Of a stretch of DNA of 64,000 nucleotides, positions 31,916 to 34,459 are shown piece by piece (positions within the stretch are counted from its first letter, which is position 1; every line of letters begins with the position of its first letter). The notes under the pieces were generated by a model, which was not told the DNA's origin, made no database searches, and worked only from the letters and a program-made list of their open reading frames with translations. This stretch comes from Paraphysomonas bandaiensis (taxonomy: Eukaryota; Protista; Chrysophyceae), in NCBI GenBank assembly GCA_965644295.1, contig CBFFRP010000288.1, positions 310,001 through 374,000 on the forward strand, written 5' to 3'. The translations under genes and the position numbers were made by a program.

Positions 31916-34459
31916 ATGAACAATCAAGTAACTACAACAACTTTATCAATTGAATATTTTCGTGGTTTTACTATGTCTCATGCGAATGAGGTGACTGTAC
32001 AATTAGGTGATGGAGGGGACCATATTAGTATAATATTAAACAACTGTGTTAAACATTCTACATCAGAATCACCAACAATGTTTGCAAACTTTTCAGCATA
32101 TATATGTAATTTCATAAGGGAAGAACGTGTTACAGAATTTACTATATCTTACTGGGATATCCCTCAGACTGCTCCGACTACACACTTATTAACACGTCGT
32201 GAGGCTGATGAAGCGGCACTTCGGGCCTCTCTGATTGATAGAGATATGAAAGGAACTAAAAAATACTATGGATATGTTGAATTAAAATACGGTCGTGGAA
32301 CTCTAGACATTCGCAGTGTTGGTTTGGAGAGGGGGGTGTTGTGTCTTATTGAGAGAGCCAAATGGATCAATGATTCTTCTACCGCATGTAAGAAGCTTAC
32401 CAAAGCAGCCAAACGAGGTTCAAATTCCCCGAAATTAATAGTATATAAAGACATTCGCGCAATTGTTCCGAACATGCAAAATAGCGTGCGTCGCTATCGC
32501 GCCACTATCAGTGTATCTAGCAATGTTATGGGTGCAGTGATTGGACATAAAGGACAAAGTGTATGCGCAGTGCAAGATGAGTTTGCGGTGCGTATTACTA
32601 CAACAGAAAGTGGTTTTACCGTAGAAGGAGAACAGGAACAAGATGTTGGTAGTGCTGTGACTGCACTGGAGGGATATGTCCCAGGTGAGGTTGGCACTTT
32701 GGGCAGGGATGGAAAACCAATCAAGTTCTCGGCGTCACCTATTAGAGATCAAACCGTGACTATGCGTTACGAAGATGTTTTCTTGAATATGGCTGGCAAG
32801 CTCTGCAAGGCAATGATTATTGGCAGCAAATCTATTGTATGCTATACACTGTTGATGGATGTGGTTCTTAACGAATATAGAGGTGAAGTAACAACTGTAC
32901 CCAGCATTGTGGAGGTCGAGCTGATTGGGCTTCAAGCTGTATTCACACGAGGAAACAATAAGTCGTGGCTGAATAGGTGCGCAACTGACGAATTTTTGAA
33001 TGCTGCGCAGCGATATAGTGCGAGACTAGTTGGACAGCATGTGGATATTAGTTTCGAAGCCATGGGGTATGCTCAGGGATCCGCACGTCGCAATATCCAC
33101 GCTTTGATCTTTCACAACAAACGTCTGCTTAACGCAGATATTTTGCGACTGGGCTACTGCAAATTGATGCAGTCTGCTCGTTATTATAACCCTGAAACCT
33201 GTCGTCGTGATGACCCAATTCGCTCCCTCTTTCCATGTATGCGAAATTTGTTAAGTGTTTCGAAATCAGATGAGTGCAATGGGTTAAGTTGGTGTGGCAC
33301 GGAGTGTATGATGTTAGATGCAGAACGAGAAGCTGCTCGTAATGGTCTTGGTATATGGAAAACTACAGAACCGACCGATCCACTAATCGGTCAGCGACCT
33401 TCACCGGTGTCTAAACGACATGTTTTTATCGACAATTCAAATATTTGGATAAGTGGAAAGCATTTTAGTGGACAACGCCAGGGCTTGGGCTTTGATCGCG
33501 CTAGAAGAAAGTCCGAAAAGTTTAAGGACAATAACAGAAAGTGGAGTGAAATCGACTTGATAATCAGTGTGACCAAGAGTAATAGTGTGCGACAGTTTGT
33601 CTGTGATCGGCGCCCTTATTGCGCAAGTGATCGTGGCTGGCGGTTAGACATTCATCGACTACTGTGGCTTGTAGGCTATGATAAAAAGGTTGACCCTAAG
33701 TTTCACGTCGCTGGTTCGGTCCCGCCTTTAAATGAGGACATTTGGAATCACATGCGCAAAAGTGGATCAATTAACATTCTAACAGGACGTACGAATGAAG
33801 GCCAATCGTCTTCCGAGGACACCTCCCTCGTTGACCAAATATATAAGTCGTGTGATCATATCTCAGAGTGCGATGAGTTTGTGCTGTGTGCTGGCGATAG
33901 AGGTTATCGAAACACTATCAAAACTGTGCGCGAGAGATTTCCATCGATAAACATTTACGTAGTCTCGTGGGCGCACAATGCATATCACCGCCTCAAAGAC
34001 ATGCAGGACGATGGCATCTTTTTTATTAACTTGGACCCGTATATTGACTACCTGCGGTACTCTAGTGAGGCTATCGCAGATGTTACGTGCACGCCCACAG
34101 TTGCAGGCGACGAAAGGAGACTCGTAACCACTTGTGAAACCAATCGTGAGGCGATTTTCCAATACTTGAAATCCACTCATAAATTGTTGGTTGACCGCGA
34201 CTTCTCGATGAGTAAACCCAATAGTCAAGGTGTGCTACGTGTGATTTTCACTAAAGAACAAAGAGATTTAGGTGTTGTAAACGATTGCACAGAATTATTT
34301 CCTATGCCTACTGGTGGAATAGCAAATCGGAAAAATCGTACTTTAACACTTTCAAACGGTTTTGATGTTTTGGCTGGCGACAGTGATGATGAGGACGTGG
34401 GTGACGAGGAAGATGACCTAGTGTATGATGATGACTTCGATGATGTTGACGTGGAGTAG
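31916..34459 (+). CDS. Intronless 847-aa protein: degenerate SNase-like + KH + SNase-like + NYN (PIN-like) domain + acidic tail
   Basis: KH: VMGAVIGHKGQSV (GxxG). SNase-like: LLNADILRLGYC...AEREAARNGLGIW. NYN: HVFIDNSNIWISG...GSVPP...EDTSL...VLCAGDRGY...VVSW...FINLD. D/E-rich C-terminus. Confidence 0.8.
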   Translation: MNNQVTTTTLSIEYFRGFTMSHANEVTVQLGDGGDHISIILNNCVKHSTSESPTMFANFSAYICNFIREERVTEFTISYWDIPQTAPTTHLLTRREADEAALRASLIDRDMKGTKKYYGYVELKYGRGTLDIRSVGLERGVLCLIERAKWINDSSTACKKLTKAAKRGSNSPKLIVYKDIRAIVPNMQNSVRRYRATISVSSNVMGAVIGHKGQSVCAVQDEFAVRITTTESGFTVEGEQEQDVGSAVTALEGYVPGEVGTLGRDGKPIKFSASPIRDQTVTMRYEDVFLNMAGKLCKAMIIGSKSIVCYTLLMDVVLNEYRGEVTTVPSIVEVELIGLQAVFTRGNNKSWLNRCATDEFLNAAQRYSARLVGQHVDISFEAMGYAQGSARRNIHALIFHNKRLLNADILRLGYCKLMQSARYYNPETCRRDDPIRSLFPCMRNLLSVSKSDECNGLSWCGTECMMLDAEREAARNGLGIWKTTEPTDPLIGQRPSPVSKRHVFIDNSNIWISGKHFSGQRQGLGFDRARRKSEKFKDNNRKWSEIDLIISVTKSNSVRQFVCDRRPYCASDRGWRLDIHRLLWLVGYDKKVDPKFHVAGSVPPLNEDIWNHMRKSGSINILTGRTNEGQSSSEDTSLVDQIYKSCDHISECDEFVLCAGDRGYRNTIKTVRERFPSINIYVVSWAHNAYHRLKDMQDDGIFFINLDPYIDYLRYSSEAIADVTCTPTVAGDERRLVTTCETNREAIFQYLKSTHKLLVDRDFSMSKPNSQGVLRVIFTKEQRDLGVVNDCTELFPMPTGGIANRKNRTLTLSNGFDVLAGDSDDEDVGDEEDDLVYDDDFDDVDVE

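What the first reader, a model, noticed from the sequence alone, without database searches (positions are those of the whole stretch)
31916..34459. Unusual SNase-like/KH/SNase-like/NYN protein in a transposon island: candidate RNA-targeting or defence ribonuclease
Seen: a 2.5-kb uninterrupted ORF surrounded by mobile DNA. It has a GxxG KH motif, an SNase-type end motif (LNADILRLG..AEREAARNGLGIW) and an NYN fold (IDNSN, EDTSL, AGDRGY, VSW). It probably has a second, decayed SNase fold at the N-terminus (KYYGYV..DI...LERG..KLTKAAKRG). The SNase catalytic motifs (DGDT, RLxGIDAPE) are replaced by GSKS and ELIGLQAV, and the last NYN acid (GDxD) is Gly. Known: KH+NYN occurs in KHNYN/N4BP1 (antiviral RNA decay), NYN in MARF1 (retrotransposon control), and tandem SN folds in Tudor-SN (RISC-associated). 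I do not recognise a protein combining all three. Inference: the SN and KH domains bind or select RNA and NYN cleaves it, making this a possible antiviral or anti-TE effector, or the cargo of a selfish element.
Basis: partly seen in the sequence, partly recalled or inferred. Interest (0 to 1): 0.78.

Follow-up and report, generated by a model that had tools for sequence, protein, structure and literature searches.

The report
Undescribed SN–KH–SN–NYN ribonuclease-like protein
An expressed, single-copy gene of the chrysophyte Paraphysomonas encodes a protein joining a Tudor-SN-like pair of inactive nuclease folds, a KH RNA-binding domain and a MARF1/LabA-type NYN nuclease domain, a combination I found in no paper searched, which makes it a likely new kind of RNA-cutting enzyme but not transposon cargo.

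Summary
A good AlphaFold2 model (pLDDT 81, pTM 0.75) confirms the proposed architecture:
- SN-like 1 (aa 5-180) and SN-like 2 (294-482) together match the SND1/Tudor-SN tandem (Z 17.2). SN-like 2 alone matches staphylococcal nuclease (Z 11.7).
- A type I KH domain (187-262) lies between the two SN folds.
- The NYN domain (496-716) matches LabA-like 2qip (Z 15.6) and MARF1 (Z 14-15).
- An unassigned C-terminal domain and a conserved acidic tail follow.

SN-like 2 lacks the canonical thermonuclease catalytic residues. The NYN domain keeps D506, D635 and D661, plus an invariant E634. The missing second Asp of GDxD is also missing in active MARF1, so its absence does not show inactivity.

The gene is single copy, intronless, transcribed (MMETSP) and host-like in composition. 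It belongs to a small, uncharacterised eukaryotic family found in chrysophytes and a freshwater sponge. The inverted flanking arms are copies of a low-copy repeat, not transposon ends, so the "cargo" reading is not supported.

Most likely this is a multidomain endoribonuclease in which the SN tandem and KH select the RNA. Activity and biological role are untested. It is a new variant of a known kind, of moderate interest.

The parts
31916..34459 (+). Complete intronless ORF of 847 aa plus stop codon: the SN-KH-SN-NYN protein
   Evidence: ORF list. An MMETSP1103 Paraphysomonas transcript protein has the same length and differs at 2 residues. Single copy in the genome.
31928..32455 (+). SN-like domain 1 (aa 5-180): a degenerate SNase/OB fold with no thermonuclease motif recognisable by eye
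   Evidence: The SND1 SN1-SN2 tandem 7knw_B aligns over model residues 5..482 (Z 17.2, 270 residues). The SN-like part of Qin, 7oc3_B, aligns over 6..147 (Z 8.6).
32474..32701 (+). Type I KH domain (aa 187-262) with an intact GxxG loop (GHKG 209-212), inserted between the two SN folds
   Evidence: Pfam KH_1 scores E 0.003 here, below the cut-off. It is above the cut-off in several relatives, best E 7.5e-10; 7 of 14 members match at the loose E-value threshold of 5. A family profile hits IMP, Nova and FUBP KH chains in the PDB. Structure matches reach Z 8-9.6 to MEX-3C, SF1, PCBP2 and Nova KH domains.
32795..33361 (+). SN-like domain 2 (aa 294-482): a complete SNase fold with a roughly 40-aa insertion; the canonical catalytic and Ca2+-binding residues are replaced
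   Evidence: Staphylococcal nuclease aligns at Z 11.7, rmsd 2.4 A, 124 of 129 residues. Alignment with this genome's own thermonuclease puts E335, Q340, F343 and N392 at the positions of the catalytic Arg, the Ca-binding Asp, the catalytic Glu and the second Arg. There is no acid in the DGDT turn.
33401..34063 (+). NYN (PF01936, LabA/MARF1-type) PIN-like nuclease domain (aa 496-716) with a roughly 55-aa helical insertion after strand 1. Putative active site: D506 (33431-33433), E634-D635 (33815-33820), D661 (33896-33898)
   Evidence: Structure matches: 2qip Z 15.6; MARF1 NYN 5yaa Z 14.8-15.1; 6fdl Z 14.4. The family profile retrieves more than 100 standalone proteins matching its NYN region, down to E 1e-17; most of those sampled carry Pfam NYN. 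Motif alignment. MARF1 residue mapping.
34064..34315 (+). C-terminal alpha/beta domain (aa 717-800), fold unassigned
   Evidence: Modelled at pLDDT about 77-92. No match is listed in the fold searches, but the domain was not searched on its own. No Pfam hit.
34316..34456 (+). Disordered acidic tail (net charge -15), preceded by a short N-x-F-x-x-L-like motif; conserved in most full-length family members
   Evidence: pLDDT about 30. Charge count. Family alignment.
30866..31682 (.). Left inverted arm (context, not part of the gene), interrupted by a roughly 180-bp palindromic MITE at 31420-31600
   Evidence: Repeat search. Genome search finds the arm in 3 places and the MITE in more than 40.
35219..35907 (.). 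Right inverted arm (context). It is part of a roughly 1.2-kb low-copy repeat (34987-36217) that also occurs on contig C381 without the gene. A 141-bp tandem duplication lies at 35837-36118.
   Evidence: No transposase or other TE domain in the arm ORFs.

Best explanation
This is an ordinary, expressed, single-copy nuclear gene of the chrysophyte Paraphysomonas. It encodes a compact multidomain protein of an undescribed architecture.

Shown:
- Two SNase-fold domains pack like the SN1-SN2 (or SN3-SN4) tandem of Tudor-SN/SND1. In SN-like 2 the thermonuclease catalytic residues are replaced; SN-like 1 shows no recognisable catalytic motif (read by eye only).
- A type I KH domain is inserted in the linker between them.
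- A MARF1/LabA-type NYN (PIN-like) domain follows, then a small unassigned domain and an acidic tail.

Inferred mechanism:
- The dead SN tandem and the KH domain form the platform that binds and selects nucleic acid.
- The NYN domain is the metal-dependent endoribonuclease that cuts the bound single-stranded RNA. It would use D506, D635 and D661, with the family-invariant E634 probably supplying the fourth acid.

This follows the same logic as MARF1 (NYN + RRM + LOTUS), plant DNE1 (NYN + OST-HTH) and KHNYN/N4BP1 (KH + PIN). The target RNAs and the biological role are unknown.
For: Fold:
- The AF2 model from a 31-sequence family alignment has pLDDT 81.4 and pTM 0.75.
- SND1 tandem: Z 17.2, 270 aligned residues, spanning model 5..482. 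SNase: Z 11.7 over 294..482. 2qip: Z 15.6, and MARF1 NYN: Z 14-15, over 496..716. KH: Z about 9 over 187..262.

Sequence:
- The family profile retrieves standalone PF01936 NYN proteins down to E 1e-17 and PDB 2qip at E 3e-9.
- Pfam KH_1 is above its cut-off in several relatives.

Active site:
- D506, N507, S508, N509, E634, D635 and D661 are unchanged in nearly every family member that covers them, including the very divergent sponge protein (the 84-aa fragment P0126 has L for S508).
- MARF1's catalytic D426 and D452 align with D635 and D661. MARF1 is a proven endoribonuclease and itself has TDVNF in place of GDxD (PMC6294520).

Host gene:
- Single copy.
- An MMETSP transcript encodes the same 847-aa ORF.
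- GC 0.434 and GC3 0.387, like the neighbouring genes.
- Relatives with the same domain order at 29-68% identity.
Against: - No enzymatic or binding data exist for any family member.
- Pfam NYN does not hit the window protein itself, and hits relatives only weakly.
- The position of MARF1 D427 is Thr636. The second Asp of the GDxD motif of the closest bacterial relatives is Gly663 in the window protein and a non-acidic residue throughout the family. The metal site is therefore non-canonical, and E634 as a substitute is only an inference. I had no coordinates with which to measure distances.
- The GxxG loop of the KH domain is degenerate in several relatives.
- KH, SN and PIN-like folds can also act on DNA.
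Confidence: 0.6

Rival explanations
1. Pseudonuclease or scaffold. The NYN domain has lost catalysis, as in SMG5 PIN or C. elegans NYN-1. The protein then works only as an RNA-binding adaptor, like Tudor-SN, that recruits other factors through its SN tandem and acidic tail.
For: - The fourth canonical acid is missing (GDRG instead of GDxD; Thr at the MARF1 D427 position).
- Both SN folds are already dead enzymes.
- Pfam NYN fails on the protein itself.
Against: - Three Asp, the DNSN motif and E634 are unchanged across a family that has diverged to about 25% identity and a very long sponge branch. That pattern is typical of a working active site.
- Active MARF1 also lacks the second GDxD Asp.
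Confidence: 0.2
2. A DNA-directed nuclease or DNA-binding protein, for example in repair or against foreign DNA. PIN-like, SNase and KH folds all have members that act on DNA.
For: - The SNase fold and some KH domains (hnRNP K, FUBP) bind ssDNA; KH-ssDNA complexes are among the fold matches.
- The PIN-like superfamily includes FEN-type DNases (PMC5499597).
Against: The closest structural and sequence relatives of the catalytic domain are MARF1/LabA-type NYN domains. Their only biochemically characterised member is an ssRNA endonuclease. No FEN-like matches are listed.
Confidence: 0.1
3. Cargo of a selfish element: a roughly 5-kb cassette bounded by inverted arms that carries the nuclease.
For: - Arms of 0.7-0.8 kb at 96-97% identity flank the gene in inverted orientation.
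- TE debris lies nearby: a copia remnant and a MITE.
Against: - The gene is single copy.
- The arm sequence occurs in only three places. On C381 the repeat extends beyond the arm on both sides and has no nuclease gene.
- No transposase or other TE domain was found in the arms.
- Composition is host-like, and relatives of conserved architecture exist in other chrysophytes.
Confidence: 0.05

Closest known systems
[quoted passage not shown]
   Same: - Same type of NYN fold (Z 14-15 to 5yaa and 6fdl).
- The equivalents of D358, D426 and D452 are conserved (D506, D635, D661).
- Both lack the second Asp of GDxD.
- Same design logic: a nuclease plus RNA-binding modules.
   Different: - No RRM or LOTUS/OST-HTH domains; SN tandem + KH instead.
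- The D427 equivalent is Thr, with Glu at the preceding position.
- A roughly 55-aa helical insertion in the NYN domain.
- About 14% identity only.
Tudor-SN / SND1 (p100)
   Same: - Tandem SNase-like OB folds packed as in SN1-SN2 or SN3-SN4 (Z about 17, about 270 aligned residues).
- The thermonuclease catalytic residues are replaced in SN-like 2.
   Different: - Only two SN folds and no Tudor domain.
- A KH domain is inserted in the inter-SN linker, and a NYN nuclease is fused at the C-terminal side.
- No sequence-level match: Pfam SNase and hhalign are both negative.
- The genome appears to encode a separate canonical Tudor-SN-like SN1 exon on contig C218.
KHNYN / N4BP1 / NYNRIN
   Same: KH domain(s) combined with a PIN-like 'NYN' ribonuclease domain.
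   Different: - Those proteins have an N-terminal extended di-KH, a Zc3h12a-type PIN domain (stated from my own knowledge; not compared here) and a CUBAN domain.
- Here there is a single type I KH between SN folds and a PF01936-type NYN.
- No such structures appear among the listed fold matches.
Standalone bacterial LabA-like NYN proteins of about 180 aa (motifs DNSNxWIEG, GSRPPxND, EKxVD, GDxD)
   Same: They are the closest sequence relatives of the NYN domain (E down to 1e-17). They share the DNSNxWIxG and GSxPPxN[DE]xxW motifs.
   Different: - Single-domain and bacterial, spread patchily across many phyla with no conserved neighbour.
- Most keep GDxD and lack the helical insertion and the ED pair.

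Membership tests
NYN domain (PF01936, LabA/MARF1 type) of the PIN-like superfamily | PIN-like alpha/beta/alpha fold with a central parallel sheet | tested here: met
   2qip: Z 15.6, rmsd 3.0, 152 of 162 residues. MARF1 5yaa: Z 14.8-15.1. 6fdl: Z 14.4. All over model 496..716.
NYN domain (PF01936, LabA/MARF1 type) of the PIN-like superfamily | Sequence-profile relationship to PF01936 | tested here: met
   There is no direct Pfam hit for the window protein, and 4 of 14 relatives hit only weakly. However, the family profile retrieves more than 100 proteins matching its NYN region (E to 1e-17), most of those sampled carrying PF01936. It also retrieves 2qip at E 3e-9 and MARF1 at E 0.006.
NYN domain (PF01936, LabA/MARF1 type) of the PIN-like superfamily | Cluster of four conserved acidic residues that bind the metal | tested here: inconclusive
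   D506, D635 and D661 are present and conserved across the family. The fourth is absent at both usual places (Thr636 at MARF1 D427; Gly663 at the second GDxD position). The invariant E634 next door may replace it. No coordinates were available to measure the site.
Thermonuclease / SNase enzymes (PF00565) | SNase OB fold | tested here: met
   Z 11.7, rmsd 2.4, 124 of 129 residues for aa 294-482. The tandem match to SND1 covers aa 5-482.
Thermonuclease / SNase enzymes (PF00565) | Catalytic Arg/Glu/Arg and Ca2+-binding Asp residues (DGDT, RLxGIDxPE, YGR motifs) | tested here: not met
   Alignment with this genome's own canonical thermonuclease (L004) gives E335, Q340, F343 and N392 at those positions, and no acid in the first turn. 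There is no Pfam SNase hit in any of the 14 members. SN-like 1 was judged only by eye from motifs and predicted secondary structure.
Tudor-SN / SND1 | Four SN domains followed by a Tudor domain embedded in a fifth SN | tested here: not met
   Only two SN folds. No Tudor hit in Pfam, and no Tudor-domain part aligned.
KH domain, type I | beta-alpha-alpha-beta-beta-alpha fold with a GxxG loop | tested here: met
   The model has that topology at 194-253 with GHKG at 209-212. Structure matches reach Z 8-9.6 to many type I KH domains. Pfam KH_1 is below the cut-off here (17.6 against 21.5 bits) but above it in several relatives.
MARF1 orthologues | NYN plus RRM and multiple LOTUS/OST-HTH domains | tested here: not met
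   No RRM or OST-HTH hit in any family member at E up to 5. The C-terminal domain has not been matched.
KHNYN / N4BP1 | N-terminal di-KH, Zc3h12a-type PIN domain, C-terminal CUBAN | tested here: not met
   A single KH sits between SN folds. The nuclease domain's best matches are PF01936-type. No RNase_Zc3h12a hit.
Transposon cargo / mobile cassette | Several copies, terminal repeats that define the element, and a transposition enzyme | tested here: not met
   The gene is single copy. The arms belong to a three-copy repeat that extends past the arm on C381. No transposase or other TE domain in the arms. Target-site duplications were not examined.

The most novel reading that the evidence does not exclude
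SN-KH-SN-NYN proteins are a lineage-restricted RNA-surveillance nuclease (anti-transposon or antiviral) that fuses the Tudor-SN and MARF1 design principles. Their patchy presence in phagotrophic chrysophytes and freshwater sponges would reflect horizontal transfer between eukaryotes. A variant: the remodelled but conserved ex-active site of SN-like 2 (K305, E335, Q340, N392) is a ligand or RNA-end sensor that gates the NYN nuclease.
Probability: 0.12. Interest if true: 0.7.

Novelty: new variant of a known kind. Interest (0 to 1): 0.45.

Why it matters
All the building blocks are known, but their combination is not. A Tudor-SN-like dead SN tandem with an inserted KH domain, fused to a MARF1-type NYN nuclease, would be a new way of aiming a PIN-like RNase at its substrates.

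The family also offers two natural test cases:
- Can a NYN active site tolerate a shifted fourth acid?
- What do catalytically dead SN tandems contribute to RNA recognition?

The family is tiny and sits in poorly studied protists and sponges, so its biology is entirely open. Any link to transposon or virus control is unproven.

Tried and rejected
- Direct Pfam, NCBIfam, PADLOC and PDB sequence scans of the protein gave only a sub-threshold KH hit.
- A first AF2 model from a 4-sequence alignment was too poor to use (pLDDT 45).
- Repeating the word-index protein search with a 14-sequence profile added nothing.
- Larger alignments that included standalone NYN proteins misplaced the N-terminal fragments, so I did not use them for folding.
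- hhalign of the family profile against single canonical SNase or SN1 sequences from this genome found nothing (probability below 1%). The SN relationship therefore rests on structure.
- The search for related loci with the 31-sequence alignment failed for lack of a conserved stretch. With the 4-sequence alignment it found no viral relative and only distant standalone NYN genes in metagenomes.
- BFVD gave only single-domain viral matches.
- The tree of the SN2+NYN region was unresolved and the sponge branch very long, so it says nothing about horizontal transfer.
- The gene neighbourhoods of 48 bacterial standalone NYN relatives showed no conserved partner.
I could not inspect the contigs, samples or flanks of the homologues, and no dN/dS was possible.
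- The transposon-cargo reading was considered and rejected.
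Full report
**Observation.** The window holds an uninterrupted ORF at 31916..34459 (+) of 847 aa. The protein is listed in EukProt/MMETSP as a transcript-derived protein of Paraphysomonas (MMETSP1103, taxid 36769, a chrysophyte). That protein has the same length and differs at two residues, V317I and T553A. 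The gene is therefore intronless and transcribed. It occurs once in the 62.6-Mb assembly.

**Family.** Direct scans left the protein open. Pfam gave only a sub-threshold KH_1 hit (E 0.003, aa 197-248), and NCBIfam, PADLOC and PDB sequence searches gave nothing useful. The word-index search found three relatives at 67, 46 and 29% identity.

A profile search of 1.84 billion representative proteins found 14 proteins at E < 1e-30. Behind them came more than 100 proteins of about 180 aa that match only the C-terminal third, and KH proteins that match aa 180-260. Most of the short proteins I sampled are Pfam NYN (PF01936) proteins.

Named family members are 'hypothetical protein' entries from Ochromonadaceae sp. 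CCMP2298 and from the freshwater sponge Ephydatia muelleri. The sponge gene lies on a 7.2-Mb contig and has a WW domain at its N-terminus. The remaining members are MMETSP transcripts or unnamed environmental sequences. In one organism the N-terminal SN1+KH part and the SN2+NYN part are called as two proteins on the same contigs, so the full architecture is kept there too.

**Structure.** A model from four sequences was useless (pLDDT 45). With a checked 31-sequence family alignment, AlphaFold2 gave mean pLDDT 81.4 and pTM 0.75.
- Foldseek ranked the SND1/Tudor-SN SN1-SN2 tandem first (E 1.5e-9), then staphylococcal nuclease and the LabA-like protein 2qip.
- VIA-align gave SND1 7knw_B at Z 17.2 (rmsd 4.7, 270 residues, model 5..482) and SND1 SN3-SN4 (3bdl) at Z 16.9.
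- The NYN region gave 2qip at Z 15.6 (model 496..715), and MARF1 NYN at Z 14.8-15.1 (5yaa) and 14.4 (6fdl).
- Staphylococcal nuclease gave Z 11.7 (rmsd 2.4, 124 of 129 residues, model 294..482).
- Many type I KH domains gave Z 8-9.6 (model 187..262).

In addition, the two SN folds pack as they do in Tudor-SN, with the KH domain inserted in the inter-SN linker. A further alpha/beta domain (aa 717-800) is modelled confidently but was not matched. I could not fold it alone, so I do not call it a new fold. The last 47 residues are a disordered acidic tail (net charge -15) preceded by an N-x-F-x-x-L-like motif, and both are conserved in most full-length relatives.

**Active sites: SN folds.** I aligned the family's SN-like 2 with a canonical thermonuclease encoded elsewhere in this genome (contig C314, motifs DGDT, VRCYGYDSPE, YGR). 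The alignment puts E335 at the catalytic Arg, Q340 at the Ca-binding Asp, F343 at the catalytic Glu and N392 at the second Arg. No acid is present in the DGDT turn. SN-like 1 has no recognisable catalytic motif either, judged by eye from the sequence and the predicted secondary structure. Both SN folds are therefore dead as thermonucleases, like the SN domains of Tudor-SN (that comparison is from my own knowledge).

**Active sites: NYN domain.** The closest relatives share DNSNxWIxG, GSxPPxN[DE]xxW, EKxVD and GDxD[YF]. The family has FIDNSNxWISG, AGSxPPxNE, S-E-D and AGDRG[FY].

Human MARF1 is a proven Mg/Mn-dependent ssRNA endonuclease with active-site Asp358, 426, 427 and 452 (PMC6294520). 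The HMMER alignment to 6fdl maps D426 to D635, D427 to T636 and D452 to D661. It also shows that MARF1 itself reads TDVNF at this motif, so it lacks the second GDxD Asp. D358 corresponds to D506 by position in the structural alignment (model 497.. against chain 349..).

Three of the four MARF1 acids are thus present. They are unchanged in every family member that covers them, including the very divergent sponge protein, and so are E634 and (apart from one short fragment) the NSN residues. E634 as the replacement fourth acid is my inference.

**Context.** The gene is not in a transposon island in any strong sense.
- The neighbours are a protein kinase and a nucleotide-sugar transporter.
- Upstream lies a 2.3-kb internally deleted copia element with identical 297-bp LTRs.
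- A roughly 180-bp palindromic MITE with more than 40 genomic copies sits at 31420-31600.
- The gene is bracketed by inverted arms (30866-31682 and 35219-35907, 96-97% identical). Another first-stage note (s1-441097) also records this.

The arm sequence occurs in only three places in the genome. On contig C381 the homology runs beyond the arm on both sides (window 34987-36217) and there is no nuclease gene. The arm ORFs have no transposase or other TE domain. The arms look like an inverted partial duplication of a low-copy flanking repeat, not like transposon termini. GC (0.434) and GC3 (0.387) match the neighbouring genes.

**Wider searches.**
- No viral relative was found in IMG/VR, and BFVD holds only single-domain matches.
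- The ESM Atlas lists a mostly bacterial 179-aa NYN cluster (TM 0.89 normalised by that cluster's own length) and Tudor-SN clusters as structural neighbours.
- The standalone NYN relatives occur in at least 149 bacterial genomes of many phyla, up to 85% identical to the query alignment's first sequence in genomes of several different phyla, with no conserved neighbour. This says little about function.
- The comprehensive PIN-like classification (PMC5499597) mentions neither SNase, Tudor nor KH.
- No paper in the library holds both 'NYN' and 'SNase', and no listed paper holding 'NYN' also holds 'Tudor-SN'.

**Interpretation.** The most likely reading (confidence about 0.6 for the functional part, above 0.9 for the architecture) is a host multidomain endoribonuclease. 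The dead SN tandem plus KH would bind and select RNA, and the NYN domain would cut it. This is analogous to, but not a member of, MARF1/DNE1, KHNYN/N4BP1 or Tudor-SN.

The rivals are a pseudonuclease scaffold (0.2), a DNA-directed activity (0.1) and selfish-element cargo (0.05). An antiviral or anti-transposon role is possible but has no support here.

**Limits.**
- The C-terminal domain was not searched on its own.
- The tree was unresolved.

**Verdict.** This is a new variant of a known kind, with interest 0.45.

Noticed in passing
window 28266-30532: A 2.3-kb non-autonomous copia-type element. It has 100% identical 297-bp LTRs (28266-28562 and 30236-30532), a gag/zinc-knuckle ORF (28544-29575) and, directly following it, a short ORF (29572-30057) that by eye looks like the C-terminal end of a copia Pol. 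Most of pol is deleted. The identical LTRs suggest a recent insertion.
   Followed up: partly
window 31420-31600: A roughly 180-bp palindromic MITE-like element (arms 31441-31507 and 31521-31587) inserted in the left inverted arm. It has more than 40 copies across the genome at 76-95% identity and matches on both strands.
   Followed up: partly
window 34987-36217 and G000:C381:23926-24828 (L002 4926-5828): A low-copy repeat of about 1.2 kb with no recognisable protein domain. Its inverted partial copy forms the left arm at 30866-31682. The right copy carries a 141-bp tandem duplication (35837-36118). Its nature is unknown.
   Followed up: partly
L010-L089 (bacterial genome contigs): The standalone NYN proteins of about 180 aa closest to this NYN domain (motif DNSN[VL][WY]IE) match the query at about 80-85% identity in genomes of different phyla (Gammaproteobacteria, Acidobacteriota, Dehalococcoidia, a Manganitrophus plasmid). 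They have no conserved neighbouring gene in 48 loci. They look like a horizontally mobile orphan gene of unknown function.
   Followed up: partly
G000:C218:96795-97391 (L003 1438-2034) and G000:C314:115908-117212 (L004 1474-2778, minus strand): The genome also encodes a canonical Tudor-SN-like SN1 exon (C218) and a thermonuclease with intact DGDT, R..G.D.PE and YGR motifs (C314). The thermonuclease lies in a frame that runs through a long microsatellite-derived HTYI repeat.
   Followed up: partly
P0014 / P0163 (Ephydatia muelleri KAL5474785.1 and related ENA proteins): Freshwater-sponge members of the family carry an N-terminal WW domain and seem to lack the KH domain. The branch is very long, and whether it reflects vertical descent or transfer is open.
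   Followed up: partly
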